A stretch of 41,260 nt of DNA. It comes from Basidiobolus meristosporus CBS 931.73 (lineage: Eukaryota > Fungi > Basidiobolomycota). Location: contig MCFE01000736.1 in NCBI GenBank assembly GCA_002104905.1, forward strand, positions 1 through 41,260, read 5' to 3'. Position 1 is the stretch's first letter. Each line of letters begins with the position of its first letter. Shown piece after piece: positions 496-38,969 of this stretch. The notes beneath the pieces were generated by a model, which was not told the DNA's origin, made no database searches, and was given only the letters and a program-made list of their open reading frames with translations. Made by a program: the position numbers and the translations under genes.

Positions 496-1605
496 CTATC
501 CGGAAATCTGCCACCATTCTTTGCGAACGGGGGTGATTCCAGCGGCGATCAAGGCCTGCTCCTTCTTGACGTCCGACTCGGATTTGAAGCCGTATGGGTT
601 ACCCTTCTGCCAACGCCAAAGGTCTTGGCACATGTCGGTCAGCCCACGCTCCGCCTTCCAATGCAGCTCCTTGTGGGCCAAATCTGGGTCGGCCACCACC
701 ACACCCACATCTCCAGGACGACGATCCACAATCTTGTAGGGAAGCTGGTGGCCCACGATCTCTGACATCGTCTTCACCATGTCCAGCACCGAATAGCCAT
801 TGCCGGTGCCGAGATTGTAAACAACACACCCAGGCTTCTCCTTGAGACGCTCCAGAGCGGCGATATGGCCCAGGGCTAGGTCGACAACATGAATGAAGTC
901 CCGCACTCCCGTCCCGTCGTGCGTCTCGTAGTCCCCTCCGAATACATTCAAGTGAGGCAGACGGCCTACAGCCACTTGCGAGATATATGGCATCAGGTTA
1001 TTGGGGATTCCCTGAGGGTCCTCACCAATCTTACCACTGCGATGGGCGCCAACTGGATTGAAATACCTAAGCAAGGCAGCATTCCATGTGGAATCGGCAT
1101 TGCATGCGTCTGTGATGATTTCCTCGATGAAAAGCTTCGTACGTCCGTAGGCATTTGTACACCCCGTCTTGCACTTCTCGTGGATAGGGATGATCTCAGG
1201 GTCGCCGTATACCGTGGCAGAGGAGGAGAACACAATATCGGTTACGTTGAACTCCTTCATCAAACTCAGAAGCACCAGTGTGGACACGATGTTGTTGTGG
1301 TAATATGTCATGGGGATGATGGAGGATTCCCCGACCGCCTTGAGCCCCGCAAAGTGGATCACCGCCGAGAAGGTATACTTCTCAAATACCTTCTTCAAGG
1401 CGACTCTGTCACAACAATCCACCTTATGGAAGGGGATGTCTTCCCCAGTAAGCTCTTCAACCCGTCGTAACGATTCCGATGAGGAGTTGCATAGATTATC
1501 GACGACCACCACTTTGTATTTGCGTTGCAACATCTCCAGGACAGTATGGCTACCAATGTAGCCTGCGCCACCGGTAACTAGAACATATTCTTGTTTGGAA
1601 CCCAT
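496..1605 (-). CDS. GAL10: UDP-glucose 4-epimerase (GalE/Gal10 epimerase domain only, no fused mutarotase), intronless, ~369 aa
   Basis: ORF 496..1686; likely start is MGSKQ at 1605. Shows the Rossmann motif [31 protein letters not shown], catalytic YxxxK (YGRTK), [24 protein letters not shown] and [11 protein letters not shown]. Confidence 0.96.
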
Positions 1606-1770
1606 TGGCTTAGATTTCAATAGGATCGAAGGGTATCTTGTATGGGGACTGGGATTGATTCTTGCCAAGAACCAAGCCCTCATCAACGGTTATTTATATT
1701 CCAGAAGGCATCTTGCGTCATGTATCATTACCCTATTCTCGAGGAAGGGATGATTGGAGCAGCTGGATCT

Positions 1771-1802
1771 CTAACCCCAGCCCCAACCCTAACCCTAACC
1801 CA
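1771..1802 (+). repeat. Short degenerate telomere-like (CCCTAA)n tract
   Basis: ctaaccccagccccaaccctaaccctaaccca contains two perfect CCCTAA units plus degenerate ones. Confidence 0.5.
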
Positions 1803-3104
1803 GGCCCAAATCTGCGCCCTCCCCTCACCCCTCCACTTTTGGTGTGGTAATCATGCGTGTTTTGGAAGGGATCAATTTCTCGATCATTCCTCTATTGGGT
1901 CAATTTGCTCGCCAACCCAAATTGGTCTAGACGTTAGAAGAAACGTGATTCATCGACTGGGCATCGAGCATCACCATCAGATAAGGCCGAATTCCCTAGC
2001 AGAAAGTTTAAATAATCCATATTGCCAAGCGAGGGGGATCGTATTCACACGCACCTCTTGACCTTGGGAGGAAAGCGGCCAGGATTTCGAACCGGTGCTC
2101 GAAACAACGAACTTCGGGAGGGGTTTTTGGCGTTCGTGATAAGGCTTATCTAGGATTCCCAGTGGTCTCCTTGTGTTCTCACCTAGATTCGATGTGGGTA
2201 CGAGATCGAAACTGGTTGAGGGAAACCGAGTAGGAATCTATTTTTAACTGCCGCCAAGATTGGCGGAAGAGGCCTTCGCTACACTGGGGGTGGCAACGCC
2301 CCCATAAGCATGGATGGTGGATGTTGACCTCTGCCTCCCCGTATTAGTCAACGCCAGAGCTCTCCCTGGCTTACAATTCACTCTCTCTGGGCATGTATTT
2401 TTCAATTCATCCCTACTAAAAGTCATCGGAGTCTTGCCATAATGGGAGTCAATTAAACTGTTTAAGTAAAGAGTCACGGATTATGTACAATGATCGACCT
2501 GCGCGTCCATTGGTGGGCGACCAGGCAGAGGTCTCTGTTCGAGGCACCCGAATGAGGCATTCCCTCACCAGAGTGACACAGAATATCGTACTACAGTTGT
2601 TAGCAACGAGACGCTGCGAAAAATTGCGTTGACATCAGACGACACCCGGGCTAATTCAGTAGCATTCGTCCTTAAGGCTTTTGAGGGTGGGAATTAATTG
2701 GCATGCACGTCTCATGAGGGCCATTTTCTTCCATTGGTTGGCTGAGCTCGTGGATGTTCCGATGCAGAACGGTTCGATGATTCTACGGTGTATCGCTCGA
2801 AGAAGAAAGCTTGGGTTACCGAGAAAGCACTGCTGATTTGGTCAGTAGCATTCATGATGATGCTGATGTAGAACAGCTCGATCGAAATGGAATCCATGCC
2901 TAACAATGGTAGACTTGGTCACCATGAATAGGCCCCTCAATCATCCACCATTCATTAACGAAACGCCTCAACCTCTGGGCCATCTGCCACCTGCGGATTC
3001 ATATAAAATGATACCAGAATCCAGATGCATCCCCAATCCCATTGCCCATCAGCTCGAATTCGTTTCCTTTGGAACGCCGTCCACCCCCCGCGCCTACGCC
3101 AACG

Positions 3105-4707
3105 ATGAACCAGAACTTAGTCCCAATTGCCAATTCCGTGGCTGACATCTATGCTCAAAATAAAGTCGATCAGGAAGTGTAAGCGCTTGCATGTATGATC
3201 GATTGGCAGCAGAAGGACTAATTCCCCTCTTATTTGGATCTTTAGCCAACGCTATCGCGCCTTGATTACTCGCTTTAAAAGTGTATATGGCTTCGAGCCG
3301 GAATTCGTCGCTCGTTCACCGGGTAGAGTCAATCTGATTGGTGAGCATATAGACTATGCGGGATTTCCTGTTCTCCCCATGGCGGTGGACCGCGACTGCC
3401 TGGTTGCCGTTGCCACCACCACAGCTGACCACAGAATCCGGATTGCCAATACGAATGCTAAATACCCTAGTCGGGAGTTTGAGTACGAAGGCGAGAACAT
3501 CATCAGCATTGATGACACCATCCATGAATGGACCAACTACTTCAAAGCGGGCTACAAGGGGATGTTGGAGAATCTCAAGTTAGGGACAGCCCCCGTCGGG
3601 ATGTTCTGCCTAATGGACGGCTCGGTGCCTTCTGGGGCCGGAATGTCGAGTTCCTCAGCCTTTGTATGCGCCTCCGCTATTGCCACCATGGTAGCCAACA
3701 AGAAGGAACTGGCAAAGACTGATATTGTCCAAATTGCGATTGCTTCCGAGCGCTACGTAGGTGTTAATGGCGGTGGCATGGACCAAACTGCATCCGTCAT
3801 GTCCAATGCCGACTCGGCGACCTTTATCGAATTCCAGCCAAAGTTCAGAACCGTTCCCGTTCAACTCCCCAATACTCAGCCGGCAATCTCGTTTGTGGTT
3901 GCCAATACCCTGGTTACTGCTGATAAGGTAGTATCAGGGCCCGTTTGCTACAATCTCCGAGTAGTGGAGACTAGGGTGGGGGCTAAGCTATTGTCAAAGA
4001 AGTTGAATCTTGAAGAGCTAAATCCGCAGACGTACAAGGAGGTTATGGATGCATACTTTATAAACCACGAGGAACCATCATACACAACAGAGACTGAACA
4101 GTGGATCTATCGACTCACCAAAATGCTTGAGCTGGTCAATGAGCATATCACCAAGCACAAAGGATACTCTAGGCACGAGATGGCCGCGGAACTTGGGCTT
4201 ACAGAAGAAGAGATTCACCAGACATTCATGTCCAAGTTCCCTGTACGCACTGAGCTATTTCAACTATACTCTCGGGCCGTTCATGTCTACTCGGAATCCC
4301 TAAGAGTTGTCCGATTCAGAGATATTTGCGAGAACTACAATACCACGCGGACCGACAGCGAGTGTATATTGCAACAGTTGGGTGATCTAATGAATGAGAG
4401 CCAGTACTCGTGCCGGGACAATTTCGATTGCTCCTGTCCGGAGCTGGAAGAGCTCACCACCACATGTCGTAAGGCCGGTGCTTTAGGATCGCGTCTAACT
4501 GGTGCAGGATGGGGAGGCTGCACCGTTTCCTTGGTCCCCGAGGACCGGGTGGAGGCGTTTATCGAAACCGTCAAGAACGAATATTTCCGCAAGCGATTCC
4601 CTCATTTCACGCCCGACCAGCTTGAGAACGTGATCTTTTCGTCGCGGCCCTCTAGCGGGGCATACATCTTCAAGAAGCATGCTGCGGCCAGCCCTATTGG
4701 TGGATAA
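3105..4707 (+). CDS. GAL1: Galactokinase (GHMP kinase, fungal Gal1/GALK2-like), copy A; 2 exons (3105-3178, 3246-4707)
   Basis: Motifs ARSPGRVNLIGEHIDY, GSVPSGAGMSSSSA, GGGMDQ and GSRLTGAGWGGC. The ORF-track start is a TTG; an ATG at 3105 plus a GTAAGC...TTTAG intron (3179-3245) gives the N-terminus MNQNLVPIANSVADIY...QRYRAL. Confidence 0.93.
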
Positions 4708-5534: not shown

Positions 5535-7131
5535 ATGCAGCAAGAAAACTTCGTGCCCACCACTAATTCGGTGATGGACATCTACGCCGAATCCAAGATT
5601 CCCGGTCAAATGTAAGCCCCAGCATTGTTTTCTGCCGATCCAAATATTGACCACCAGCGCAACCACTAGAAAGCGCTATCGTGATTTATTCCAGGAATTC
5701 AAAACAATCTATGGGTTTGACCCAGAATTTGTCGCCCGGTCCCCAGGTCGCGTCAACATCATCGGTGAGCATATTGACTATGCGGGATTCCCCGTGCTGC
5801 CGATGGCCGTAGACCGAGATTGTTTGATTGCCGTAGCTACCACAAAGTTGGATAGCAAAGTTCGCCTGGCAAATGTAAACCCAAAGTTCACCCGGGCAGA
5901 ATTCTCATTCGTCGACAAGGAAAGGATTGTCGACATTGACGATACCGTCCATGAATGGACCAACTACTTCAAAGCGGGCTACAAGGGCATGCTTGAATCC
6001 TTAAAGCTCGATGCGCCTGTGGGCATGTTCTGTCTCATGGATGGCTCTGTCCCCTCAGGGGCTGGAATGTCAAGCTCCTCAGCATTGGTCTGCACCTCCT
6101 CAATTGCCACCATGATAGCCAACAAAAAGTGCCTGAGCAAGAACGATATTGTTCAGATCGCCATTGCATCCGAACGATATGTCGGAACCAATGGAGGTGG
6201 CATGGACCAAACCGCTTCGATCATGTCGCATGCGGATGCAGCAACATTCATCGAATTCCACCCCAAGTTCATTACCACCCCGGTCCATTTCCCTGCAACC
6301 CTCCCGGCTATATCCTTTGTGGTGGCCAACACAATGGTTGTGGCGGACAAAGTGGTGTCTGCACCTGTATGCTACAATCTACGAGTAGTGGAAACCAAGG
6401 TCGCGGCTATGATTCTGGCCAACAAGCTAGGCCTACTTAGCGAGAGACCCCAAACACTCAAAGAGGTCATGGATTTGTTTTTTGCAGGATCCGAAGAGCC
6501 CAAATATGCCACTGTCACAGAGCGTTGGATCTTTAGGCTTGGCCGAATGTTGGAGCTAGTGGAGCAGTTCATCACCCAGCACGATGGCTATTCTCTTGCA
6601 GAAATGGCAGAGGCAGCTGGGCTGTCTGAGGATGAGATCCATGCTAGATTTATGTCCAAGTATCCAGTTAGGGCTGATGTATTCCACATCTATGCCCGTG
6701 CCATTCATGTGTATTCCGAAGCTCTACGGGTGGTTCAATTTCGGGATGTCTGTGAGAGAAATCAAGATACTGTTGAGGACAGCCAGGTCGTGTTGCATCA
6801 GCTGGGAAGATTGATGAATGAGAGTCAGGTCTCTTGTAGAGATAACTACCACTGCTCATGCAAGGAGCTTGATGATCTTACATTGATATGCCGCAAGGCT
6901 GGAGCATATGGCTCAAGATTGACTGGTGCCGGCTGGGGTGGATGCACAGTGTCGATGGTGCCTGAGGATCAAGAGCAGGAATTCATCCAAAGAGTGAAGG
7001 ATGAATACTTCCGACCCAGATTCCCTGATTATACTGAGGAGCAGCTGAGCAATGTCATATTTTCATCTCGCCCGTCTTCTGGGGCGTTCATCTATAGGAA
7101 GCGTACTGCCATTAATCCATATGGAGGTTAA
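5535..7131 (+). CDS. GAL1: Galactokinase, tandem paralog copy B; 2 exons (5535-5611, ~5670-7131)
   Basis: Same GHMP motifs (GRVNIIGEHIDY, SGAGMSSSSA, GGGMDQ, GSRLTGAGWGGC). ATG at 5535 gives MQQENFVPTTNSVMDIY. A phase-2 intron starts GTAAGC at 5612, the same position as in copy A; the acceptor (5657 or 5669) is ambiguous. Confidence 0.93.
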
Positions 7132-7490: not shown

Positions 7491-9165
7491 ATGACATTAT
7501 ACCTTGCCTTTGCGCTCATTATCTCGCTGGTAAAATCAGAAAATATACTTCCTCTCAGTGTAGCAAATTTCGATCAGACAGTCACCACTTCTCCATTAGC
7601 CTTGGTTCGGTTTCATGCATCTTGGTCTAAGAGCAGCAGACAGTCAGGTAAATCCAAAATGGGCGGTAAAAGTAATGAAGTTCATCAACTAACTCCAGCT
7701 TTCCGGAACTAGAATTGGCATTTCACTCGGTAGCATCGGATTTGAGTCCTCATATCACCTTTGCTACAGTGGATTGTTCCGAATCTAATAGTTTATGTAA
7801 TCAGCTTGATGTATGGGATCTACCGACATTAAGGATTTTCAGGTAGTTAAAGTGCTTATTTTTGATATGGCACGTAACATCGTCGTGACTGGATCTCGCT
7901 TTAGAAATGGAACCAGATACAACTACAGCGGGCCTTTTGAGAGAGATGGGATGATGGAATACCTGCAAAAGTATGCTTTGGAGGTCAGATTCGTGTATTC
8001 TTGGGACGGATATTAACTTGTCCTCAGGCAGAAACTTCCAACCCTCACTCAGGTGAGCGCCATCAATTTCCAAGAATTCATCAATCATGACTTGATTGTG
8101 CTTGTGGGTTTTCTTGGAGAGAATGAGGGACATGAAGCGTTACGGGATATCGCACTCCAATTCAGAGATCAATTCCAGACTGGTTTATGCACAGACAGAA
8201 CCCTAATGAAAGAGCTTCAGGTTACCCCGCCCACCCTAATCCTGTATCACCATGATATGGGCGACTCATATCGCTACACTGAAGCCTTGGAGGTTCCTAG
8301 GATTGCTCAGTTCATCAAAACCAACTCGATCCCGATTATATCCGAAATAACCCCCACGACATACGAGCTGATGCGAGAAGCAGACCTGCCGGTCGCTTTC
8401 ATATTTTACTCGGGCTCTGGGGAAAGGGAACGCCTGAGGAAGGAACTGGTCGGAGTAGCGAGGTTGTTTAGAGGCTCCATCAGCTTTGGTTTAATCAATG
8501 GTGCTGAATATCAGGTGTTTGCTGGATTGTTGAACATTCAGCCAAGATTTCCTGCTTTGGCCATCCAAACACCAGCCAATAATGCAAAGTATGTATTGCC
8601 TCAAGACATACCAGTTGGTGCTGAATCAGTACGTGATTTTGCATACCAGTTTTTGCAAGGGAAGGCCCAACCAAGCCTGCTTTCGGAAGACATCCCTGAG
8701 ACAAATGATGGTCTGGTTAAGATTGTTGTGGGAAAAGAATTCAATCGAATTGTGATGGATCAAGAGAAAGATGTGGTGGTGGAGTTTTATGAGTCCAGCT
8801 GTGGTGCAGGCTGCAACGAGATTGATCCATTGTATGAAGCAGTGGCACGGAAATTCTCCCATCAGAAGGGGCTGCTATTCGCTAAAATGGATATGAAGTA
8901 TAATGAGTTACCTATTGACAAGAATCTGGAGATTATCGGCTTCCCTTCGGTGAAGCTGTTCAAGGCCGGTCAGCCCAAAGAAGCGATAGACTTTGAAGGC
9001 GCACAAGAGTTCAATGCATTCGTCGACTTCCTGAGACAGCACTCTACCTATCCTACCGATGTTGAGAAGATATCTGACTATGAGGAGTATCAGCTGATTA
9101 TGCAGATGAAGCAAGAGCATCAAAAATCAGTGCGCCAATTGAGACCCTCTCATGATGAGCTTTAA
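7491..9165 (+). CDS. Protein disulfide isomerase-like ER protein (a-b-b'-a' thioredoxin folds) with non-canonical active sites; ~4 exons
   Basis: Signal peptide MTLYLAFALIISLVKS; thioredoxin-fold segments FATVDC...LPTLRIF and VKIVVGKEFNRIVMDQEKDVVVEFY...FAKMD...GFPSVKLF; C-terminal HDEL. Introns ~7643-7698 (donor uncertain), 7843-7904 and 7971-8027. Confidence 0.85.
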
Positions 9166-10154: not shown

Positions 10155-13100
10155 ATGAGACTGGCGGTAATCTCATGCTTGGCTTTGTCCGGATCTATAA
10201 TCGGCGTCACTCATGCCCAGGATGTCAGTTACCGCCCTGTTCTTGACAACTGCATAACACCACTAGCACGAAACGCTGTTCCCAAGGCAGTTTTTCCTGA
10301 CAACGTCGGGGCAATGCCTCCCACCCTGACTTCAGCCCCGCACACCCTGAGCTGCCCAAACTCACTCGCCAACCTGAATCTTTTTCCGCCGCCGAGATGC
10401 CTCTCACTTGAAGGTACGACGTACCCTCCCAATGACAATCAAGACATATATGCCCACCGCGGACAGAAGTCATCTCGACTGATTACTCACATGGTATGGC
10501 CACACGTTATACTTCACTCGTGAAGCATCGATTTGGTTGACGAATTCGCCTTTCCTGTAGATCACATTTTTTGGACATTTCCTGTCCTTGGATTTAGGCG
10601 ACTTGCTCGTCAACAACACTGACACAGCAAATGTCGACCTACCTGCTGGAGATAATCTTTTCCCTGAGAGCCTCACCACGAACGGAACGCTGCTATTCAA
10701 AAGAGCGCAGTACCAGATCGGCCCAAACGGCTATCGACAGGCCCTTAACAATGCCACCTTTACCTTGGATGGCTCCGCGATCTACGGCTCTATCACTGCG
10801 GTAAACCAAGCATTGCGGTGGACGAACATGCACGGGAAACTGCGAATGACCAGTTTGAACAACACTATAGCCTTGCCGATCAGAAGTGACGATGGCTATC
10901 TACTAGGGGCTGCGCCATCGCGTAGCATGAATATTTTCACCATGGCCATTCAGATCATATGGATGCGGGAGCACAATCGCATATGTGACGAGCTCTACGC
11001 AATCTACAAGGACACTTGGACGGACGAAAAGTACTATCAAGAGGCACGAAGGCGTGTGGTTGCCCTGATCCAAAAAATCACCTACAACGAGTACTTGGGG
11101 ACAGTCCTTGGTCGCTGGATATCGCAGGACTACGACATCTACAAGAATAGTACGCCCAACACCGACAATTTCTTCCTCGGGACAACCTTCCGCTACGGCC
11201 ACTCAGAGCTGAGGTATGTTTTTACACTAATCTTGGTCCAGATATCCAGACACTTATCTCGATGCACTGCGACCCATGCCACATTAGCGATACATATCGT
11301 CTGGTGGATACCCAAGGTGTTTATCTTAAAGACTTTTCGCTGCGAGAGATCTCCAATTTGACCTTGATCGAGAGCATTCCTCTGGAACTCCTAATCCGGT
11401 CTGCAGCAGCCCAAGTCCAGGAAGAAGTAGACATCTACTTCCCTTCTATGTCCATGAATTACACCAATACCAGGGGAGTCTCCTACGACATCCCGGCCTT
11501 TGATGTTCAACGCGGACGTGACCTAGGCATTCCCCTCTACAACGATGCCCGGCAAGCATTCAACCTCCCAAGAAAAACTAGCTTCGAGGACATCAGCAAT
11601 CTACCGGATGTGCAAAATCGACTGAGAAAAATGTATGGCACGGTTGACCGGGTCGAGTCTTATATGGGTGGTCTGGCGGAGAACAAAATCACGGGCTCCA
11701 GCTTTGGCGAGCTGTTTTTCAAGAGCATGGAGGATCAATTCGTCCGGATACGCAATACAGACCCGTACTGGTACGAGAACAGCCCGGATCTTGTCGATTA
11801 CGTTAAAAGCACGGCTTGGAAAGACGTCATTGCCCGAAACCTTCCGCCCACTGCCTTGATGCCTAATTCTATTTGGACCTTACAACAGGAGAGCTCAGCA
11901 AGCCTGAATGATCTTTCTGCCACCTATCGCAACGAATACGTGGCTAACGATATGTACAAACTCAACTGGGAAGTCCAAGGAGATGTGATCAAGTTTGTCC
12001 TGCAGCTCAAAAGCAACCAGGGTTGGTGCGGCGTAGGGTTCAACCAAGTGAGCGCCTCAATGGGGATGGTAGCTACTCCAATTTCTTGATATATCTTAGC
12101 CTCATTCTAACATCATGTCAGATCAAAGCAGACTTCGTAGTGGCCAACTTTTCGCAGGGGTCATTTAATATCGCACCCTACACCTTTGAAGGTCTTAGTG
12201 CCAGCGTACCCAGGTCGACTGATCTCTATAAGATCACTGATTCAAGCATGATGAACTCCAAAGGTGTAACAATCATCCGGTTTTCTCGCCCTCTGGATGT
12301 GGGGACATCCAATAAGATCATCAATACCAAAATGCTACGTAGGTGGACCCCTCGAAGTGCATCGTCCCCGAGCAGCCGTACTAACCCGGCCTTCTAGTGA
12401 TATGGGCATACTCTACCACAGAGACATCCCCCTCGCACCATAGAGAGAACAAAGGGAAGAAAGAGATGAATTTCTTCACCGGCGAGAATTCGAAAGCCAT
12501 CGGATCCACCCATAAATTCCACGGCATAGGGATGATACTGACCTGGACGTAAGTCAGCATGGCGCAACCTTTGGCCCATACCACTCACTAACACCACAAT
12601 CGCACGGCTTATCTAGTGTTCTCTATCCATGTAAGGCCAAAACCCGTTGGTCGGTCTGAATACGCATACTGACTGTCACTCTCCTGTAGTGTCGATTTTT
12701 GTAGTGCGATTCCGAAAGCACACCAATAATTACATGACCTTGCACCGGAATATGCAAATCATTGGGGGGATCTCGGTTTCGACCTTGGGGGCTGCTGCCA
12801 TCGCCACATTCACCGGCATGATGTCGAAATCGCACGGGACATTAGGACTGGTCATATATGCGTGCGTCTTCTTTCAGCTTGGTTTGGGTATGATATCACT
12901 GTGGGGAAGAGAAAACACCCTCTCGGTGAAACAGGGGATTACGAAGTATACTAAATACTTTCACGGGATATTCGGTAGTGTTCTACTGTTGATGTCATGG
13001 TACCGTATCGTGCCCCTACTACTCACACTCAGTGAACAGTCGCTCATCTTTGCTATTTGAAGGACGAACATATATCTTGGAATCCGCGCCTATGCTCCCG

Positions 13101-15317
13101 CCCAAGAAAGACTACTTACAATTCTCTATTTTGTCTGGTTGGGGATCATATTACTCTCCTTCTGTGTCGGGCAATACTGGTACAAGTACGGCACCAAGCT
13201 GCAAACCAACTCCAGGACAAGCAATCGAAGGTCAATTGCGAACTTCCTGGATGAGAAGAAAGTAGAGAGCCTTCCCGCCTTCACTATCGACGATGTCAAT
13301 GAGAGAGTTGCTCAAGGAGTAAGTGACTTGGCGCTGAGCGCTTATCTACCTTTGGCTCGCAACTTACAATTTGATTACTCCAGGCGTGCCTAGTTATGAT
13401 GGAGGGTTATGTGTTCGACATTCGCAAGTGGATTCAGCATCACCCTGGTAAGTGCCCACAATTCCCGTTTCGTCCAACTCGTTCGCTGACCACGGATGCA
13501 CGCGCAGGAGGAGTCAAGATTTTAGAAGCGGTTGTAGGGACCGACATCGGTATTGACTTTTACGGTCACCACAAACTGGCTGAGGAAGAAATCAGCAAAC
13601 ATGACCAGTCCGCTGGGAGGAAATCCGTTTTCAACAGTGTCGTCGGGGACTACACATCAGAAAAGCGCAAGAAGAAAGGGTTCGGAAACCTCGTAACCCA
13701 GCTGTTCCCGACGAATATTTCAGTGGTGAAGCACGACCATTCAAGATTTGCCGCAGAGAAGCTAGCAACCATGCTTTTTGGGCGCTTGTTAGACGAGAAA
13801 GAGCCCGTAGGAAGAACAACCACTTTGGCCAAAAGAAGAGGAAAAGTGCTGGGATTACCCTCGACTCCGAAGCCATCTCAAAACCTTCAAAATCACCTCT
13901 ATCGCCGTTATCTTGTCAATAGGGTTACCACGGTGACCCTCCCCGCAGCCAAAGCCACAGTCAAGCGGTTCGATTTGTCCATTTTACACCCCGTCAAGAG
14001 CATGGACCCATTTCAGCCTGGTGAATATATTGAAATCCAAGCCAAGATCGAGAACCAAATAGTGGTTCGAGCCATTACACCAATCCAAGGCACCTTGTCA
14101 GATTCATTCTATTTCTACGGAAAGCTTTACTCGGATGGTTTGATGTCCAAGTTCCTGGTAAGTTGATAATGAATTCTACGGTGGATTAAATTCCGACTCA
14201 TCATGAAATACGTGTAGGATGAACTTCAGCCGGGGACACAGCTGAAAGTTCGCGGCCCCCTATACAACGTAACCACAGATACTATCCTGAATCCAATCAC
14301 CCGCGATACCGAGCCCAATAAGACGGCATCAACTGAATCTGTCAGCAGCCTCACAGAACGCTATGAGATCCCTAGGCCTCTGCGAAACAAAAAGAGGCCA
14401 GAATTTGGATGCTGGGATAATTTGTACATGATTGCAGGAGGATCCGGCATTACACCCATGTTGCAACTGGTACTTCAATTGAAACCCTTTCCGTTTTCCG
14501 GCTCCTTATTAAACTCTGGCTTTAGATCTACTACCATTTGGAAAACTGGAAAAAAGAGAACCCCAGGAATAGCCGTATGCATCTGCTGTATTGCAGCTCG
14601 ACTATACTCGATATAATTGACGGATACACCCTTGATCACGTGGTCGAAAACTCCAAGGGAAGATTGACGATTACACATGTGCTGTCGTCCCCATGCGAAA
14701 ACTGGACGGGCTTAACGGGGCATATAGACCATCACATCTTGCGAAAATGGCTATGCACCTACCCTGGCAATAATCCGAACCCTCGCCAATTAGATGCAAT
14801 GCTAGAGATCAGGGAATCATCTACCCCCAGAACTCCAGAGACCCCCAACCTGGAGACAGAGGATACTCAGAGGCTGCTTCCATCCCAACCAGCCTCTATT
14901 TTAGAAAAGCGGGAGTCTAGACCCGCGAATATAGTGACGACTGAGCAGATCAAGGCTTCTGAACGCGTATCCAAATTCTTAGACGAGGCTATTCCAGAAT
15001 TCGTTCCTAAAGGAATTCTAGGCAACTCCTCAAGGAACAAACTGAAGCGCTCAACCCAGATCTCACCTACTGGGCAACTGGTTGGGGATGTGGATCATCA
15101 TATCTCCATGCCGCTGTATCCTAGCCAACAATTGGCATCTGGATCGCTGTCGACACTAAACCTCCCACTGGAACACGACTCCCCATGGTGGTATTCCGAT
15201 GAACCACTTCCCCATACTAAGATAGTTATATGTGGGCCATTTGGGATGGCGCATTCGTCTCGCAAATCACTGCGTCGACTGGGCTTTCAGCCTCAGAACA
15301 TTAGTGTGCTCCGCTGA
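10155..15317 (+). CDS. Multidomain membrane oxidoreductase: signal peptide, animal-type heme peroxidase fold, DOMON, cytochrome b561, cytochrome b5-like, FAD/NAD(P)-binding reductase; 12 exons
   Basis: Manual splicing gives one frame with exons ~10155-10493, 10561-11213, 11288-12068, 12122-12338, 12398-12548, 12617-12630, 12690-12999, 13063-13318, 13384-13447, 13508-14157, 14218-14469 and 14526-15317, all GT-AG. Motifs: WMREHNRI, FRYGHS, DVQRGRDLGIP (peroxidase); WCGVGF..GM..ADFVV and IWAY..SHH (DOMON); four His at FHGIG, LHRNMQ, SHGTLG and FHGIFG (b561); VFDIRKWIQHHPGG...HDHS (b5); VRAITP, G.MSKFL, KVRGP, IAGGSGITPMLQ and ICGP (reductase). Confidence 0.85.
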
Positions 15318-16641: not shown

Positions 16642-17998
16642 ATGAAAGCCCTTATTCTTGTCGGAGGTAAGTCTGCTTCTTAACAGGGAAACAAGATAGC
16701 TTGGAACTTAAAGTGCGTTGTACCTATCGCGTCATCTAGGTTTTGGAACCCGTCTCCGTCCACTCACCCTTACCCTTCCTAAACCCTTGGTGGAGTTTGC
16801 CAACAAGCCAATGATCCTTCATCAGATTGAAGCTCTAGTCAAGGTAAATATTCGCCATTCCTCTTACTCACAACTGCTAGTTCTCACTTTGGCTCTCATC
16901 TGCGATAGGCTGGTGTCACTGACATCGTTCTCGCGGTCAACTACCGCCCAGAAATCATGGTGTCTGTTTTGGAGAAATATGAGAAGGAATTCAATGTCAA
17001 AATCACCTTTTCCGTGGAAACCGAGCCCCTTGGCACAGGTACTTCACCCGATGTGACTACTGCCCTTCCAGGTGGCTCTAACCATATTCTACCTAGCCGG
17101 CCCCCTTGCTCTCGCCAAAGAGATTCTCGGTAGAGACAACAGCCCATTCTTCGTCTTGAACAGTGATGTAATCTGTGATTACCCCTTCGAACAGCTCCGT
17201 GATTTCCATCTTCAACACGGAGATGAAGGAACCATTGTGGTCACTAAAGTCGATGAACCCTCCAAGTATGGTGTAGTGGTCAACAAAACCGACAGCACAG
17301 CAATCGAGAGATTCGTTGAGAAGCCCGTGGAGTTTGTATCCAACAAGATCAATGCTGGCATGTACATTTTCAACCCTAGCATATTGGATCGTATCGAGGT
17401 AAGCCCGGATCGCAGTAGACACAACATATGATGGGTTGCATTTATTGAAGCACGATCTTTTTCTTAGCCCAAGCCAACTTCTATTGAGAAGGAGATCTTC
17501 CCTACTATGGCCGCCGAGGTTCAACTTCATTCCTTCAACCTCGAAGGTTTCTGGATGGATGTAGGACAACCCAAAGATTTCCTTACTGGCACCTGCCTCT
17601 ACCTTTCCCATCTGTCCAAGCGGAACCCCCAAAGCCTTGCCCCAGCTTCTGAGCCATATGTGTATGGCGGAAACGTACTCGTCGATCCTAGCGCCAAAAT
17701 CGGCAAGGGCTGCAAAATTGGACCCAATGTGGTGATTGGGCCCAATGTTGTTGTTGGCGACGGTGTACGTCTTCAAAGATGTGTTTTGCTTGAAGGAGCC
17801 AGAGTCAAGGACCATGCCTGGATCAAGAGCGCCATCATTGGCTGGCACTCGGTTGTCGGCAGATGGTGCCGCTTGGAAGGGGTCACCGTTTTGGGAGATG
17901 ACGTTAACGTCAGCGATGAAATCTACGTGAATGGTGGATCTGTTCTTCCTCATAAGGGCATCAGTGTCAACGTCTCCGAACCACAAATTATCATGTAA
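16642..17998 (+). CDS. MPG1: Mannose-1-phosphate guanyltransferase (GDP-mannose pyrophosphorylase); 5 exons
   Basis: Spliced [69 protein letters not shown] and a C-terminal hexapeptide repeat domain. Exons 16642-16666, 16740-16843, 16909-17038, 17097-17398 and 17468-17998. Confidence 0.96.
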
Positions 17999-18579
17999 CA
18001 AGAGAAAATCGATATTAACCTCGCACCACAATCTTTTCCACACCGACACTATCTAATATATTCCCTGAGCCAGGAATTCATTTTGGATCACTTTAAGATG
18101 ATTCAGTCAACTCTTTTGTGAAATGTATATTAGAAATTTCCATCTTTTTAAACCATCCCCAGATCACAACGTCAATAAAGAATTAGATATGATTTCCAAA
18201 TCCCCATCGCCCGACGCCAAGGATTCAATTCACACCCGCGGCTCAGTGTCGCTGCGGCCATATCTACCAATGAGATGATGAAACATCTTGGTGCGAGGGG
18301 CACTCAAACCAATTTCCATTGGCCAGTGGTGTTTACATGATGATGATGAGTGGATGCGCTGGAGAAGTGTATCCAAGCGCAACTGGATCGCGATGAGGTC
18401 AAGATAGAGAGGTGGTGGGGAGATAGGCTAATCCGAGGCTTGGACAAGTTCAGTCACAGTGGGTATCTGGTTTGTGAGCCTTTTCTTAGATTTGGCGAGG
18501 GTGCCAGCCTAAGAATCCCGCGATGGTTAAAAATAAGGCTGGAGATAAGCTAAACAGTGTTTGGAACTCGTAAATAAAC

Positions 18580-25665: not shown

Positions 25666-28377
25666 CTAACCGGATTTGTGGGATTCCTCCTTGGGCTCTC
25701 CACGGCGACGCAGATCCCGTAATTTGGGGTTGTTGATCAGCGTATACGCTAAATGCCATCTGTTGCGGGCAATCAGCCTGCGGCTTTCCAGATTTGCCGT
25801 TACAATGGTAATGGATTTCATTTCCCCATGAGCATCCTGCTTGTCATCCAAGAAGATGGACGGTGGCCTAATCAACTTGCGCCAACCAGTGGCCTCAAAT
25901 TTGAGGGGGGCTTCATGGTGGGTGATTCCTAGCATCAAGCAGAGGAAAACCATGTTGATTGGGTTGTAGTAGTAATGTTCAGAAAGAAGCTAGTGAAAAG
26001 GCCTGCGTTAGTATCTGCACCGACAGACGCCAATGCTTTCGAATATTACGTACCAGTCCTAGGTAGGCATTGTAGCCACCATCGCCCGATCTGAGGTTGA
26101 CGTGTGATACGTAGCGATCCACTCTCGAGCTGAATACGAAAATTGTGAAGAATGCTTTGAGCATGCGTTCGAGCCAGCCGGAAATCCCCTTGGGGATATG
26201 CACGAACATGGCAAGGTATGACCAGTGCATGAACCCGTTTCGACGTTTGAGCCAGAATTTTGTCCCGGGAATGATGAACAGTAGTGTGGTGATAAGAGAG
26301 ATCACCGCACTGGTGACAGCCGAAATGATGAGAGGGACCAAAAAGGAGAGCAGAAGCCATTTAAGTAAGAAGTTTCGGATTGATTCGATCAGAATGGCTA
26401 ATGAGAGCAGCACCAGTAGCAAAAAAAGTTGAATGATTACTACAATAGAGGCAAAGAACGCATTTCCTAGCGCTGAGCCATAGAACTGGAGATAGTTGTT
26501 CATACTGATCTTGTTGCCCTTGCGATGATGAAACAGGGAGTAGTTTCCCAAGCGAAGTTGCACCAAATCGCGCTGAAACCGATATTTGATTCCGGTGGCG
26601 AAGATGATAATCCCTAGTGAGTGAGTTAGCCACATTCCTTGGCAATCGATTCACTGATTTTTTATACCAAATCCGCCTACTAGAACAGCAATGAAGGTAG
26701 ATGATTTCAGGGCCAAAAGGACCTTTCTTGCAGTGTTCATATCTTCTTCTTCTATTCCGCTCATACCGTTGTAACTGGTTACAGCCGCAGTGAGAACGCA
26801 GGCCCCTGGACTTTGTATAATATAGTACAGAAAAACAACAATATATGCCATCGCTTGTGCGATGAGTAAAGCAATAGTGACGAGTGTGAAGTGGATCATG
26901 TCGGGGATTCTTGATAAAATCAAATGGTTGAGACACTTTAGGAGTAGTTATTGGCATGTCAATGCTACTTACTCGATGTACCGAACAATATCACGCTTAT
27001 ATTTCCGGAAGCTGAAGAATTTTCCAGGGTGGAGGATCGAAGTGATAGGCCCAGGTGGCGTCCTGGCAGCCTGAAACTCCATCTTCTTAAAGGCTAGCAT
27101 ATCTTTGACGTACTGGAAATCAGAGGAATATGCAAGCACCGCTTCTTGAGACCTAGAAGCCTTCGCCGAAAAGATACATGCCAGGAAGTAGATGATCATG
27201 ATAAAAAAACACGTCATGACCGGAACGTAAGAGATGATTTTCGTGGTTCTCGAGAGTTTTGCCCCTTCCTCAAAATAGACTGTTATGGCCGAAGACATGT
27301 ATTGCAAACAAAGTGCTGCCGATATGATGACTCCCAAGAGGCTTCCGAGAAGTTTGTGCGACTGTTCGTAGCACAGAAAGAGCGGATAAAGTATCAATCC
27401 TTGAAGAAGAAGCAAAATCATAAAGAATATGCCTTTGGTGTATCTAGCAGCAGTGGGGTTCAGTGAGAATTGGGCTTGAAATCCAGTATCACCCCAGAAA
27501 ATCTGCATTGCGGATATATAAACCAACTGCGCAACGATCCCGAAAAGGACGATAGAGATACGATTATCTCTTCGACGTTTGAGAAGGTTGATCGGGCTAA
27601 GTAAACACACAGGTCAGTTTCGTTACGGGTGGAAATGGATCGGCTTCATGCCCAACTTACATAGGAAATGGAACATAGTTGCGTCCAAAAACGAGGAGTA
27701 AGAAGGGAATAACAACGATGCATCCACGAGACACCCATGCAGCATAATTGTTGACTGTGGTGGAGTATGATTAACATGGTTGTCATTGAATGTCTTCGTA
27801 AGGTATGATTGTCACTTACTTTTATCGAACAGATTCTTTATGCGATCGTCATAGTAAGACTCGTCAAGATAGAGGACGAAACCATTGTAACATACCGGGT
27901 CATGGTTTGACATATATATGTGGAGTTCGATGGAGCGAGTATACGAAGGCACATCAACGGGGTCGTAGGAATCATCCCAGAACGTTGTGTTAGTTGCATC
28001 CAGCCACTCTTCGTGCATAACGGCTTGATTCTGATATTTGAAAACCAAACGTAGTCTTGTAGAATCTAAAGCGGCAAGAAAGGGGATTGATTGGGAAGCG
28101 AAACGAATATTCGCTGTCTATATGAGAAATTAGTACAGAGTAGAGTATTGACAACGGTTAGGAGATTCTTCAACCATTAGACCGTTGTCTATCTTTGAGG
28201 CAAACGGTGCCAATTTATCCTGGCCGATTGTTTGAATTAACTCTATATCCTTCTTCGGCTGATCCAAGTCTAGTAAACTAGCATCCAAAGAGCAACAGGC
28301 TGCAGAATGCAAAAGTATAATTCAGCGTCTTCTTGCGAACCCGAAGTATGCCGTCGTCGCTTACCATTACCCCACAT
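25666..28377 (-). CDS. STRA6/RBP-receptor-like multi-pass membrane protein; multi-exon, 5' end uncertain
   Basis: Spliced product contains FPIPINLL..RDNR..IVLFG, many TM helices, F..SRVDR...DGGYNAYLGL|LLSEHYYYNP and the C-terminal ARNRWHLAYTLINNPKL, which matches the STRA6 terminal signature. Introns include ~26616-26669 and 27597-27660. The start at 28377 is tentative. Confidence 0.8.
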
Positions 28378-34058: not shown

Positions 34059-35346
34059 TTGGTTCTTTCAATACTTATATAAAATGCATAGTTGCAATAA
34101 GTAAAGATTTATCATTCAAGCCTCTTGTGTAGAACATGTTGTCCTCCATCTACAAGAAACTGTTGGGCTAGAGGTGGTAACTCACAACACAGTAAACCCT
34201 CAACATTTGTAAGTGTTCAAGTAGGGTGGTATGTATATCTGGTATTGACTTTGAGGTTACTCACAGTATGGCTTATTTCCTGCACATCTCTTTAGTAATC
34301 AACCTCCTAGGTTCCTTACTTCATTTTAATGTTTGAAACCATGGTGGAGTTAAACAACCATTGAGGACACCGAAATACGGCCATAGTAAAGTTGCTCTGA
34401 GCACTATTATTTGCTATTGATTGTGATTTTAATATTGGCTTACCAGTTCCCATTTCCGTTCTCGGGATATATCGGTCGCGCATCATTAGGTCAGAACATA
34501 CTAAATACTGTCAGATTACCTTGTATCTTTGGTAAACATCTTCGCTAATTTCGTGCAGAGCCAACTTCCTGTTGAGTTCCTCTTTTAACTTACATCACAG
34601 ATGGTGCCGATTATCTAACCCCAATCGTTAATAGTTTGTGCCCCTATGGGTGCCTTCAAAAATTTGTTTCAAACTAATCCTCAATATGTCTGATTAGGAT
34701 GCAGTTGGGCTAACGTAATGTTGTACACATCGATATTTAAGATGTGTGGTGTTACAACGAGCACATTCAGTTTATTATTTTTAGTTGCAAGCCCCAATCT
34801 TCTTGTGAACAAGCGAATAGTATAAAGCCACCCTTAAAGCAAATCTGGTTTCCCTCGCTTAACTTCATACTTATTTGCTTACCTACAGTAACTTGATAGT
34901 CGCAAAATAAATGATGATTCACTATATATGTTATCTGAAACTTTAATCAATGATGTTAGTTGATAAGATATTAGTCAGCCATTTACCATGCAATATTATA
35001 AACCAACATTAAATATGTGGTAGCTCCTGCTCATATATCTCCACAAGAGAACTTACCAATCAGCTTTTTCATATAGCATCAGGCTGGCAGTGGATCTGAC
35101 AAATAAGGAGCAAGCAGTATCAGGTGGTTATTACCAGTCAATGCTAATGTTATATTAGCCTGAGCAAGGAGTGTCTAGCACTGAGCCAAATTGTAATGAG
35201 TTGGTACACCAATAAGTGGGTCTTATTTCACTTTCAAGTTTTCAAGTGCAAATACCCTATTGACAATATTTCAAAGAGCCCCACTTTCACTATTAGGTAA
35301 GCTTTTACTGATTTGAGTATGCTATGAACTGCTCATCCTAATAAGG

Positions 35347-35657
35347 TGTTGTGTCCAAGAGAAAAGTGTAATAAAACTCTTGAATGGTTTAACTGAACCC
35401 TGGGTGACAACCAAGTGCAGAAACTAAGAACTGTCAGAGAGTGGTGAAAATATTAGCAGAGAAGTTCTGGTCTAATATTGGTTTTGTATATAGTTGAGTT
35501 GGGCTATAAAGGCAACAGAGTTGCTTTGCTATACAGGCTAGGCTTGGTGTTCTTGGGAGTGCTAGATATGCTAGGCTGGGGTAGAAACCAGAATGTAATT
35601 GTTGAGTTCTTAATTTTGTTGAGGCACACACTATAAACCAAAAGGTTCAGTAAACTT
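35347..35657. mobile_element. Truncated LTR of the same family as 36493-37169, in the opposite orientation
   Basis: Begins TGTTG. Its reverse complement aligns (~80% by eye) to 36844-37169. It stops abruptly at 35657, where TTAGGG and a retroelement 3' end begin. Confidence 0.75.
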
Positions 35658-38852: not shown

Positions 38853-38969
38853 TTAGGGGGGGGGATGATAATCACCACAGGGTGAAATCTTTATTTAAAT
38901 AATAAATAAAGAAGCCAAACTTCAATATGAATATTTGAGATGCAGTAAGCCTAAAAGTTAAGCTTGGAC
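38853..38969 (-). mobile_element. Short type-C unit sharing only the retroelement 3' terminal signal
   Basis: TTAG9, tcacc-acag-ggtga, aatctttatt and aaagaagcca; the remaining sequence is unlike the LINE 3' end. Confidence 0.6.

What the first reader, a model, noticed from the sequence alone, without database searches (positions are those of the whole stretch)
10155..15317. Single-chain trans-membrane electron wire: peroxidase fold + DOMON + cytochrome b561 + cytochrome b5 + FAD/NAD(P)H reductase
Seen: twelve exons splice into one frame carrying all five modules, with a signal peptide, DOMON Met/His ligands, four b561 His, b5 HPGG plus a second His, and the GGSGITP...CGP reductase motifs. Known: DOMON-b561 proteins move electrons across membranes, b5/b5-reductase take them from NAD(P)H, and DUOX couples an extracellular peroxidase-like domain to an NADPH-fed membrane heme chain using different (NOX) modules. 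Inference: a convergent DUOX-like machine that delivers cytosolic reducing power to an extracellular heme domain, for ROS chemistry, metal reduction, cross-linking or oxygenase activity. I know of no functional description, but did not search.
Basis: partly seen in the sequence, partly recalled or inferred. Interest (0 to 1): 0.8.

Follow-up and report, generated by a model that had tools for sequence, protein, structure and literature searches.

The report
Self-powered transmembrane haem wire, fungal
One 12-exon fungal gene encodes a single membrane protein that joins an NADH-reductase, four electron-carrying haem modules and an outward-facing peroxidase-like domain; the design recalls animal DUOX, recurs in early-diverging fungi and some protists, and I found no paper that studies it.

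Summary
On the + strand, 10155-15317, twelve exons (eleven GT-AG introns of 53-74 nt, one 14-nt micro-exon) give an open frame of 1492 codons. In order it carries a signal peptide, an animal-haem-peroxidase fold, DOMON, a 5-helix cytochrome b561, cytochrome b5 and an NADH-cytochrome-b5-reductase-type FAD/NAD domain. Every domain junction lies inside a single exon, so the fusion does not depend on the splice model.

The same architecture is predicted in Basidiobolus ranarum (78-80% identical), Glomeromycotina, Mortierellomycotina, Blastocladiomycota and chytrids. It also occurs in a transcriptome ORF of the stramenopile Platysulcus.

All haem ligands of DOMON (Met/His), b561 (4 His) and b5 (2 His) are conserved. 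Five helices put the peroxidase and DOMON outside and b5 and the reductase inside.

- The peroxidase pocket is remodelled. The distal His is Leu, both haem-ester residues are Ser, and the Arg is shifted. Only the proximal His and the Ca loop are kept, so a classical peroxidase is unlikely.
- The second b5 His lies about 55 residues further on, in H-D-H-S.
- Only the membrane module is non-homologous to DUOX.

No functional paper was found and no RNA run was listed. I rate it an uncharacterised, conserved family: a new variant of known transmembrane electron carriers. The chemistry at the outer end remains inferred.

The parts
10155..10493 (+). Exon 1. ATG at 10155. Signal peptide about 10155-10217 (hydrophobic core LAVISCLALSGSIIGV, then THA|Q). 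N-terminal part of the peroxidase domain, with the conserved Cys...PPPRC pattern.
   Evidence: B. ranarum P0001 starts in the same way.
10561..11213 (+). Exon 2, core of the peroxidase fold. Distal motif FFGHFLSLDL at 10567-10596, with Leu 10588-10590 where the distal His should be. Shifted Arg at 10921-10923 in GAAPSRSM. Ca loop NNATFTLDGSAIYGS. Proximal His at 11200-11202 in FRYGHSEL.
   Evidence: Pfam 3e-42. PDB alignments to cyanobacterial peroxidase, DdPoxA and LPO. Family columns.
11288..12068 (+). Exon 3. C-terminal half of the peroxidase domain (to about 11875), then the start of DOMON (from about 11916). DOMON Met ligand at 12060-12062. The peroxidase/DOMON junction lies inside this one exon.
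   Evidence: An_peroxidase and DOMON on the same ORF. for the donor at 12069. Met is invariant in alignment A1.
12122..12338 (+). Exon 4, middle of the DOMON beta-sandwich.
   Evidence: Pfam DOMON profile 44-111. Colinear with relatives.
12398..12548 (+). Exon 5. End of DOMON (His ligand 12439-12441) and the start of b561 helix 1 (His 12520-12522). The DOMON/b561 junction lies inside this one exon.
   Evidence: (H136 and H168 invariant).
12617..12630 (+). Exon 6, a 14-nt micro-exon coding V-L-Y-P plus two split codons, in the middle of b561 helix 1.
   Evidence: It restores the frame and colinearity with relatives (W-x-V/I-L-x-P-x-S). The micro-exon and both splice sites are conserved in B. 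ranarum DNA while the flanking introns have diverged.
12690..12999 (+). Exon 7, b561 helices 1 (end) to 4. His at 12743-12745 (helix 2), 12833-12835 (helix 3) and 12962-12964 (helix 4).
   Evidence: Pfam Cytochrom_B561. Family columns. Family profile against A. thaliana b561 4o6y, E 2e-6, with the four His aligned.
13063..13318 (+). Exon 8. End of helix 4, helix 5 (LLTILYFVWLGIILLSF), a basic cytosolic linker and the first strand of cytochrome b5. The b561/b5 junction lies inside this one exon.
13384..13447 (+). Exon 9, b5 core up to H-P-G. First b5 His at 13441-13443.
   Evidence: HPGG invariant.
13508..14157 (+). Exon 10. Rest of b5, with an insertion of about 55 residues and the second His at 13738-13740 in HDHSRFAAEKLA. 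A linker follows, then FAD_binding_6 (RAITP and GLMS motifs). The b5/FAD junction lies inside this one exon.
   Evidence: Cyt-b5 and FAD_binding_6 on the same ORF..
14218..14469 (+). Exon 11. End of the FAD domain (KVRGP), a variable loop, and the start of the NAD domain (YMIAGGSGITP).
14526..15317 (+). Exon 12. NAD-binding domain with a poorly conserved insert of about 155 residues (about 14763-15231), the CGP motif, and the stop TGA at 15315-15317.
   Evidence: Pfam NAD_binding_1 2e-8.. Relatives end at the same alignment column.

Best explanation
This is one gene for one roughly 1492-residue type-I-like membrane protein that forms a self-contained chain for moving electrons out across a membrane.

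Proposed path: cytosolic NADH reduces FAD in a cytochrome-b5-reductase-type domain. Electrons pass one at a time to the fused b5 haem. They then pass to the inner b561 haem (His of helices 2 and 4), the outer b561 haem (His of helices 1 and 3) and the Met/His haem of the DOMON domain on the non-cytosolic face. From there they most likely reach a His-ligated haem in the attached peroxidase-fold domain.

That domain keeps its proximal His, its Ca loop and its fold. It has lost the distal His, the canonical Arg position and both haem-ester residues. I therefore take it to be the terminal acceptor that carries out reductive chemistry on O2 or a peroxide (an oxidase or NADH-peroxidase type reaction), not a classical H2O2-driven peroxidase.

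Shown here: the gene structure, the module order, the ligand conservation, the topology and the conservation of the family. Inferred: the direction of flow, NADH as donor, haem occupancy, the last transfer step and the reaction at the end.
For: One chain:
- All five domain junctions lie inside single exons.
- The twelve exons map in order and without gaps onto full-length relatives.
- Relatives with the full set of Pfam domains come from Glomeromycotina, Mortierellomycotina, Blastocladiomycota and chytrids.
- A transcriptome ORF of Platysulcus tardus carries peroxidase, DOMON, b561, b5 and FAD domains.
- An ESM Atlas cluster of 179 members carries peroxidase, b5 and DOMON.

Cofactor sites:
- The DOMON Met and His and the first b561 His are invariant. 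The second and fourth b561 His are nearly invariant. All four b561 His are conserved in the full-length fungal relatives shown.
- The four His align to the haem ligands of A. thaliana b561 4o6y.
- The His pairing 1-3 / 2-4 and the Met/His in DOMON match the CYBDOM protein CRR (PMC10784552).
- In b5, HPGG and H-x-H-S are invariant, as are R-x-Y, G-x-x-S, RGP, GGxG and CGP.
- The nearest solved reductases are NADH-cytochrome b5 reductases and the nitrate reductase FAD fragment (5e-38 and weaker).

Topology: a signal peptide plus five TM helices in the window and in relatives, with basic loops after helices 1, 3 and 5 (sequence).

Folds:
- DOMON plus b561 model of the relative P0151: pLDDT 86. 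It matches the DBH DOMON, cellobiose dehydrogenase cytochrome domains and b561 4o6y.
- Peroxidase model of B. ranarum P0001: TM 0.74 to the cyanobacterial peroxidase 8s6c and to DdPoxA.

Remodelled pocket.
Against: - No RNA run was listed for this genome, so a single transcript is not shown here.
- The B. ranarum annotation splits the orthologous locus into two genes. I read this as a missed micro-exon.
- Peroxidase plus DOMON also occurs fused to a class-C GPCR membrane domain that offers no electron path (P0054, P0100). The pair can therefore serve without a wire, and electrons need not end on the peroxidase-fold haem.
- With the distal His, the Arg position and the ester residues changed, haem binding itself is unproven. 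The human DUOX peroxidase-like domain is likewise degenerate and inactive (PMC4420034).
- From my own knowledge, b-type DOMON and b561 haems have potentials well above the Fe3+/Fe2+ couples of LPO-type haems, so reduction to ferrous haem may be uphill.
- The FAD motif is R-A-I-T-P rather than R-x-Y-T-P in Basidiobolus.
Confidence: 0.55

Rival explanations
1. It is a self-powered CYBDOM-type reductase. Electrons leave from the DOMON haem to an external acceptor (ferric or cupric chelates, a quinone, or a partner enzyme such as an LPMO). The peroxidase-like domain is a non-redox appendage for docking, regulation, sensing or adhesion, like the degenerate domain of DUOX.
For: - CYBDOM proteins are ascorbate-dependent ferric reductases with the same Met/His plus 4-His haem set (PMC10784552).
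- Cellobiose dehydrogenase cytochrome domains, the structural matches of this DOMON, pass electrons to separate enzymes.
- The distal pocket is degenerate.
- Peroxidase plus DOMON is also found on a GPCR membrane domain with no wire.
- A ciliate cluster has DOMON, b5 and FAD domains without any peroxidase.
Against: - The proximal His, the proximal-side RxRDxGxPxYN motif and the Ca loop are strictly kept across the fungal clade. This argues that a haem is still bound.
- The peroxidase domain stays directly joined to DOMON in every lineage sampled.
Confidence: 0.25
2. It is a classical NADH-driven peroxidase. The outer domain forms Compound I with H2O2, and the DOMON haem re-reduces it, as cytochrome c does for cytochrome c peroxidase. 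The protein would then scavenge extracellular H2O2 at the cost of cytosolic NADH.
For: - From my own knowledge, electrons from a b-type haem to Compound I/II run steeply downhill.
- Non-fungal relatives keep canonical residues: P0073 has GQFLAHD and GDIRVNE, and P0122 has GQLVTHD. This may be the ancestral function.
Against: In this gene and its fungal clade the acid-base His is Leu, Phe or Tyr, the Arg is displaced by two positions, and the Asp and Glu haem esters are Ser or other residues. Fast heterolytic cleavage of H2O2 is therefore not expected.
Confidence: 0.12
3. These are two or more separate genes (peroxidase-DOMON, and b5-reductase) that merely lie head to tail, or the fused model is a splice-prediction artefact.
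For: The B. ranarum record annotates two adjacent genes at the orthologous locus, 86 nt apart. There are no RNA data for this genome.
Against: - That split cuts b561 helix 1 from helices 2-5, separating the first haem His from the other three.
- The 14-nt micro-exon and its splice sites are conserved between the two species while the introns are not.
- b561 helix 5 and the start of b5 share one uninterrupted exon (13063-13318).
- More than ten independent annotations and one transcriptome ORF give the fused protein.
Confidence: 0.04

Closest known systems
Dual oxidase (DUOX, NOX family)
   Same: An extracellular peroxidase-homology domain of the same superfamily (PF03098; DUOX1 is hit), with degenerate catalytic residues. 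A membrane bis-haem relay. A cytosolic FNR-like FAD/NAD(P)H domain. All in one chain with the same inside-to-outside logic.
   Different: The membrane module is a 5-helix cytochrome b561 with four His on four successive helices, not the 6-helix ferric-reductase domain; no PF01794 hit appeared in any scan. It has two extra haem stations (b5 inside, DOMON outside). No EF-hands were found. The reductase is of the cytochrome b5 reductase type. The proximal His is kept here, whereas it is absent in DUOX (PMC4420034). The nearest peroxidase structures are cyanobacterial and Dictyostelium enzymes, not DUOX.
CYBDOM proteins (DOMON plus cytochrome b561; Arabidopsis CRR/HYP1, animal FRRS1/SDR2)
   Same: An N-terminal extracellular DOMON with Met/His haem, followed by b561 with His pairs 1-3 and 2-4, giving three b haems across the membrane (PMC10784552).
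   Different: Known CYBDOMs take electrons from cytosolic ascorbate. Here a b5 plus NADH-b5-reductase cassette is fused to the cytosolic end, and a peroxidase fold is fused in front of DOMON. Whether an ascorbate site survives was not tested.
Natural b5 / b5-reductase fusions (CYB5R4/NCB5OR, fungal CBBR, nitrate reductase C-terminus)
   Same: A b5 haem domain followed by FAD_binding_6/NAD_binding_1. The family profile hits CYB5R3, CYB5R4 and the nitrate reductase FAD fragment. CBBR feeds a P450 (PMC12462446).
   Different: Those are soluble or tail-anchored and serve cytosolic or ER-face acceptors. Here the cassette is tethered to a transmembrane haem relay. Its b5 carries a roughly 55-residue insertion and its NAD domain a roughly 155-residue insertion.
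Cellobiose dehydrogenase (flavin dehydrogenase plus DOMON-like cytochrome)
   Same: A flavin-reduced Met/His b-haem domain of the same fold (Foldseek matches 4qi3, 1d7c) acts as a mobile one-electron shuttle to an extracellular metalloenzyme.
   Different: CDH is secreted and soluble and is fed by sugar oxidation outside the cell. It has no membrane relay and no peroxidase fold.
Short peroxidases of the peroxidase-cyclooxygenase superfamily (Dictyostelium DdPoxA 6erc, cyanobacterial peroxidase 8s6c)
   Same: They are the best sequence and structure matches of the outer domain. The Ca loop and proximal His are shared.
   Different: Those enzymes have the full Gln/His/Arg distal set and haem ester links. 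This clade does not. The seven families in the 2015 review (PMC4420034) do not include a DOMON/b561/b5 fusion.

Membership tests
Peroxidase-cyclooxygenase superfamily (PF03098) | Sequence and fold match to the alpha-helical haem peroxidase domain | tested here: met
   Exons 2 and 3 score 3e-42 and 2e-34. LPO, DdPoxA, MPO and DUOX1 are hit. The model of the 80%-identical B. ranarum protein has TM 0.74 to 8s6c and 6erc.
Peroxidase-cyclooxygenase superfamily (PF03098) | Distal Gln-x-x-Asp-His and Gly-Asp-x-Arg-x-x-Glu (catalytic His and Arg; Asp and Glu haem esters) | tested here: not met
   The window has G-H-F-L-S-L-D and G-A-A-P-S-R-S-M. His is replaced by Leu, Asp by Ser and Glu by Ser, and the Arg is moved by two positions. 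The same holds in all members of the fungal clade.
Peroxidase-cyclooxygenase superfamily (PF03098) | Proximal His, proximal-side RxRDxGxPxYN motif, Ca-binding loop | tested here: met
   FRYGHSE, QRGRDLGIPLYN and NNATFTLDGSAIYGS are conserved across the family.
Haem-binding DOMON (PF03351; CDH-cytochrome type) | Beta-sandwich fold with Met and His axial ligands | tested here: met
   The two exon pieces score 21.4 and 20.3 bits, below the cut-off of 32.7 because the domain is split. Relatives score 46-58 bits. Met and His are invariant. The model matches DBH DOMON and CDH cytochrome domains (on relative P0151).
Cytochrome b561 (PF03188) | Four His on four consecutive TM helices that bind two haems | tested here: met
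   The window exon scores 21.4 bits against a cut-off of 23. The four His are conserved. The family profile hits 4o6y at 2e-6 with the His aligned. Structure TM 0.61 to 4o6y.
CYBDOM | DOMON directly N-terminal to b561 in one chain, DOMON on the non-cytosolic side | tested here: met
   The junction lies inside exon 5. There is a signal peptide and five TM helices.
CYBDOM | Cytosolic ascorbate as electron donor | not testable with these tools
   A fused b5/b5-reductase cassette suggests NADH instead. This is inference.
Cytochrome b5 (PF00173) | HPGG and a second His (in the G-H-S-x-x-A context) | tested here: met
   HPGG spans exons 9 and 10. H-D-H-S-R-F-A follows after a roughly 55-residue insertion. 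Both His are invariant in A2. The Pfam score on the exon is 20.4 against a cut-off of 23.7 because of the insertion; relatives score 36-54 bits.
NADH-cytochrome b5 reductase / FNR-like (PF00970 plus PF00175) | R-x-Y-(S/T), G-x-x-(S/T), G-G-x-G-x-x-P and C-G-P motifs | tested here: inconclusive
   GLMS, GGSGITP and CGP are present and Pfam is above its cut-offs. The family profile hits 2eix at 5e-38. However, the Tyr of R-x-Y-T-P is Ile (RAITP) in both Basidiobolus genomes, although it is invariant in the ten other relatives aligned.
NOX/DUOX | Ferric-reductase transmembrane domain (PF01794) with bis-His on helices 3 and 5 | tested here: not met
   No PF01794 hit appeared in the window pieces or in any relative. 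The membrane part is b561.
NOX/DUOX | EF-hand Ca-regulatory region (DUOX/NOX5) | tested here: not met
   No EF-hand family appeared in any Pfam scan.

The most novel reading that the evidence does not exclude
This family is a third, independent eukaryotic design for exporting NAD(P)H electrons across a membrane, beside NOX/FRE and ascorbate-fed b561. In it a six-cofactor single chain (FAD plus five haems) reduces an outward-facing His-ligated haem whose pocket has been rebuilt (hydrophobic residue for the distal His, no ester links). That haem would activate O2 directly, making reactive oxygen or an oxidising ferryl species from O2 plus NADH, and so merge the DUOX and peroxidase steps into one protein.
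Probability: 0.2. Interest if true: 0.85.

Novelty: new variant of a known kind. Interest (0 to 1): 0.6.

Why it matters
Two ways are known for eukaryotes to push cytosolic electrons across a membrane: NOX/FRE enzymes and ascorbate-fed cytochromes b561. This family shows a b561/DOMON relay hard-wired to its own NADH reductase on the inside and to a peroxidase-fold haem on the outside.

- It offers a single-polypeptide system in which DOMON-to-enzyme electron transfer can be measured directly. For CYBDOM and cellobiose dehydrogenase that step is known only between separate proteins.
- It gives an independent parallel to DUOX, whose peroxidase-like domain still has no agreed function.
- It is present in arbuscular-mycorrhizal fungi, Mortierella, Basidiobolus and chytrids. 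I did not recover it from Dikarya, but I did not search them specifically. It may therefore bear on extracellular redox biology, such as ROS, iron or wall chemistry, in these lineages.
- Mortierella alpina carries a full-length copy (P0167). From my own knowledge it is genetically tractable.

Tried and rejected
- RNA evidence: one search for sequencing runs listed none.
- Donor at 12048 (GTGAGC) for intron 3: rejected. It removes the invariant DOMON Met, and all other ten donors begin GTA.
- A direct join of exon 5 to exon 7: rejected because the phases do not match. The 14-nt micro-exon solves this.
- My first reading that R and E of 'REHNR' are the catalytic Arg and the ester Glu was wrong. 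The LPO numbering places them in the upstream G-D-x-R-x-x-E motif. This was corrected and note 4.
- phmmer of exons 10 and 12 alone against the PDB gave nothing. The family profile A2 was needed.
- Paper searches on DOMON, b561, peroxidase, b5, DUOX and early-diverging fungi found no description of this architecture. The CYBDOM/LPMO search was uninformative. The Iyer/Aravind 2007 DOMON paper is not held.
- Tree of the peroxidase half: the careful search did not finish. The quick tree puts the window in a 34-row clade (SH-aLRT 95). All its looked-up members are fungal, and 30 of the 34 rows are followed by DOMON. The tree does not resolve whether the non-fungal DOMON fusions share one origin.
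- The search for homologous proteins was not used, because the representative search already gave the relatives.
- The joined 12-exon protein was never built, searched or folded. All window searches were made exon by exon, by reference. Full-length work used database relatives (P0151, P0001, P0122 and others).

Full report
GENE MODEL. The window is eukaryotic and fungal in style, with short GT-AG introns. The closest relatives of this gene are Basidiobolus ranarum proteins at 78-80% identity. Reading the sequence and checking phases by script, without ever building the joined protein, gives twelve exons on the + strand:
- 10155-10493
- 10561-11213
- 11288-12068
- 12122-12338
- 12398-12548
- 12617-12630
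- 12690-12999
- 13063-13318
- 13384-13447
- 13508-14157
- 14218-14469
- 14526-15317

The eleven introns are 53-74 nt long. All are GT-AG and all donors begin GTA. No exon has an internal stop. The CDS is 4479 nt (1492 codons plus TGA).

Two points needed outside evidence.
- Exon 3 could end at 12047 or at 12068; both are in frame. Only 12068 keeps the Met that is invariant in all relatives. B. ranarum DNA has its donor at the same place.
- Exons 5 and 7 cannot be joined in frame without the 14-nt exon 12617-12630. With it, the protein reads W-T-V-L-Y-P-L-S-I-F-V-V-R-F, colinear with relatives. In a DNA alignment with the B. ranarum contig, the micro-exon and both of its splice sites are conserved while the flanking introns are not.

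MODULES. Pfam on the separate pieces finds An_peroxidase, DOMON, Cytochrom_B561, Cyt-b5, FAD_binding_6 and NAD_binding_1, in that order. The DOMON, b561 and b5 scores on split exons are just under Pfam's cut-offs. The exons align in order and without gaps to full-length relatives whose domains do pass.

Each junction lies within one uninterrupted exon:
- peroxidase/DOMON in exon 3
- DOMON/b561 in exon 5
- b561/b5 in exon 8
- b5/FAD in exon 10
- FAD/NAD in exon 11

The single-chain claim therefore does not hang on any splice choice.

COFACTOR SITES.
- DOMON: Met (12060-12062) and His (12439-12441) are invariant in a 14-sequence alignment.
- b561: the His residues at 12520, 12743, 12833 and 12962 each sit at the start of one of four consecutive helices. 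They are conserved. In a profile search they align to the haem ligands of A. thaliana b561 4o6y (E 2e-6).
- From the topology, His 1 and 3 lie near the outer face and His 2 and 4 near the inner face. This is the same pairing as in the CYBDOM protein CRR (Met89/His180; His 220-289 and 256-325; PMC10784552).
- An AlphaFold model of DOMON plus b561 from the Acaulospora relative (pLDDT 86.4, pTM 0.66) matches the dopamine beta-hydroxylase DOMON, cellobiose dehydrogenase cytochrome domains and b561 4o6y.
- b5: HPGG spans exons 9 and 10. The conserved second His is in H-D-H-S-R-F-A (13738-13740), after an insertion of about 55 residues. The nearer G-H-H is not conserved in the family.
- Reductase: G-L-M-S, K-V-R-G-P, G-G-S-G-I-T-P and C-G-P are present. 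The family profile finds NADH-cytochrome b5 reductases (2eix, 5e-38), nitrate reductase FAD fragments, CYB5R3 and CYB5R4.
- The Tyr of R-x-Y-T-P is Ile in both Basidiobolus genomes.

TOPOLOGY. The N-terminus is a typical signal peptide. There are five hydrophobic helices in the window pieces and in relatives. The loops after helices 1, 3 and 5 are rich in Arg and Lys. An odd number of helices after a cleaved signal peptide puts the peroxidase and DOMON on the non-cytosolic side and b5, FAD and NAD in the cytosol. Which membrane it sits in (plasma membrane or an internal compartment) is unknown.

THE PEROXIDASE-LIKE DOMAIN IS NOT CANONICAL.
- The fold is secure. The best solved matches are a cyanobacterial peroxidase (8s6c) and Dictyostelium DdPoxA (6erc). 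LPO and MPO follow, with DUOX1 further down.
- Kept: the Ca loop, the proximal His (11200-11202) and the RxRDxGxPxYN motif.
- Changed: the distal motif reads G-H-F-L-S-L-D where peroxidases have G-Q-x-x-D-H-D. The G-D-x-R-x-x-E motif reads G-A-A-P-S-R-S-M.
- In residue terms, the catalytic His is Leu, both haem-ester residues are Ser, and the Arg sits two positions later. This pattern holds for the whole fungal clade: Basidiobolus, Glomeromycotina, Mortierellomycotina, Endogonales and Paraphysoderma.
- Some non-fungal relatives are close to canonical. P0073 has GQFLAHD and GDIRVNE, and P0122 has GQLVTHD. The fusion probably began with a working peroxidase, and the fungal branch rebuilt the pocket.
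- According to PMC4420034, the DUOX peroxidase domain is also mutated and inactive, and its role is obscure.

DISTRIBUTION.
- Full or nearly full architectures occur in Acaulospora, Gigaspora, Diversispora, Funneliformis, Entrophospora, Actinomortierella, Mortierella (including M. alpina), Paraphysoderma and Powellomyces. They also occur in a transcriptome ORF of Platysulcus tardus and in an unassigned assembly. The Quaeritorhiza and Nowakowskiella proteins, the latter from a 4-kb contig, carry only part of the set.
- Shorter database entries come from short contigs or split predictions.
- The ESM Atlas holds a 179-member cluster with peroxidase, b5 and DOMON. It also holds a ciliate cluster with DOMON, b5 and FAD but no peroxidase.
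- A quick tree of the C-terminal peroxidase half puts the window in a 34-row clade (SH-aLRT 95) whose looked-up members are all fungal. It does not resolve the deeper origin.
- The sources name these proteins 'heme peroxidase', 'hypothetical protein' or 'cytochrome b5 heme-binding domain-containing protein'.

THE TWO-GENE RIVAL. The B. ranarum record annotates the orthologous locus as two genes 86 nt apart. The break falls exactly at the micro-exon. The first 'gene' reads through the micro-exon donor into the intron. The split would leave the first b561 His on one protein and the other three on another. I read it as an annotation error. Direct RNA proof for this genome is missing; for RNA runs, none was listed.

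MECHANISM. Shown: the order of the modules, the ligands and the sidedness. Inferred from established properties of b5 reductase, b5, b561 and DOMON cytochromes: NADH to FAD, to b5, to the inner b561 haem, to the outer b561 haem, to the DOMON haem.

The last step and the end reaction are open. I favour transfer to a His-ligated haem in the peroxidase fold, which then reacts with O2 or a peroxide, because the proximal side is strictly conserved and the domain is always directly attached to DOMON. Two things weigh against this. Peroxidase plus DOMON also occurs on a GPCR-type membrane domain with no electron path. And electrons may simply leave from DOMON, as in CYBDOM ferric reductases.

As an inference, fungi may use a fused NADH-fed donor in place of ascorbate. 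PMC10784552 notes that S. cerevisiae cannot make ascorbate.

LITERATURE. Eight of the nine full-text searches bore on this architecture and none found a description of it; the ninth was uninformative. The 2015 classification of the peroxidase-cyclooxygenase superfamily lists seven families, none with DOMON, b561 or b5 (PMC4420034). A study of ferric-reductase-domain proteins reports DOMON fused to FRE-type reductases in Naegleria and oomycetes, which is a related idea built from a different membrane module (PMC3591440). The library lacks most subscription journals, so absence here is not proof.

LEFT OUT BY RULE. The joined 12-exon protein was not built, searched or folded. Window evidence is exon by exon, and full-length inferences rest on database relatives.

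VERDICT. This is a conserved, apparently unstudied architecture: a new variant of known transmembrane haem electron carriers. Interest 0.6.

Noticed in passing
window 496-1686 (-), 3262-4707 (+), 5647-7131 (+): An NAD-dependent epimerase/dehydratase-like ORF lies next to two tandem galactokinase-like ORFs (GalKase_gal_bdg plus GHMP kinase domains). This looks like a Leloir/GAL-type cluster with a duplicated kinase.
   Followed up: no
window 8053-9165 (+): A protein-disulfide-isomerase-like ORF (Thioredoxin_6 plus Thioredoxin) sits directly upstream of the gene studied.
   Followed up: no
window 35000-41260: GC skew is strongly positive (+0.15 to +0.31), and there is a reverse-transcriptase ORF at 37621-38679 (-) (RVT_1). 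Earlier notes of this scan describe a LINE / telomere-like array here.
   Followed up: no
L001 (B. ranarum JASJQH010009231.1) 15-1021 and 1107-3630: The public annotation splits the ortholog into two genes at the 14-nt micro-exon. The micro-exon and its splice sites are conserved (TAG | 14 nt | GTAAGT), so the split looks like an annotation error.
   Followed up: yes
P0054 (JGI metagenome) and P0100 (Rhizamoeba saxonica transcript): Peroxidase plus DOMON is fused to a 7tm_3 (class C GPCR) membrane domain instead of b561. The distal His is replaced by Val or Thr. This may be a redox- or haem-sensing receptor.
   Followed up: partly
ESM Atlas cluster: A ciliate cluster of 54 members carries Cyt-b5, DOMON and FAD_binding_6 without a peroxidase. 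This suggests that a self-powered DOMON core also exists on its own.
   Followed up: no
window 14071-14085 and L001 about 2459: The FAD motif R-x-Y-T-P reads R-A-I-T-P in both Basidiobolus genomes. The Tyr is invariant in the ten relatives aligned.
   Followed up: partly
window 17093-18049 (-), 25979-27610 (-): Long ORFs with no Pfam match. They were not examined further.
   Followed up: no
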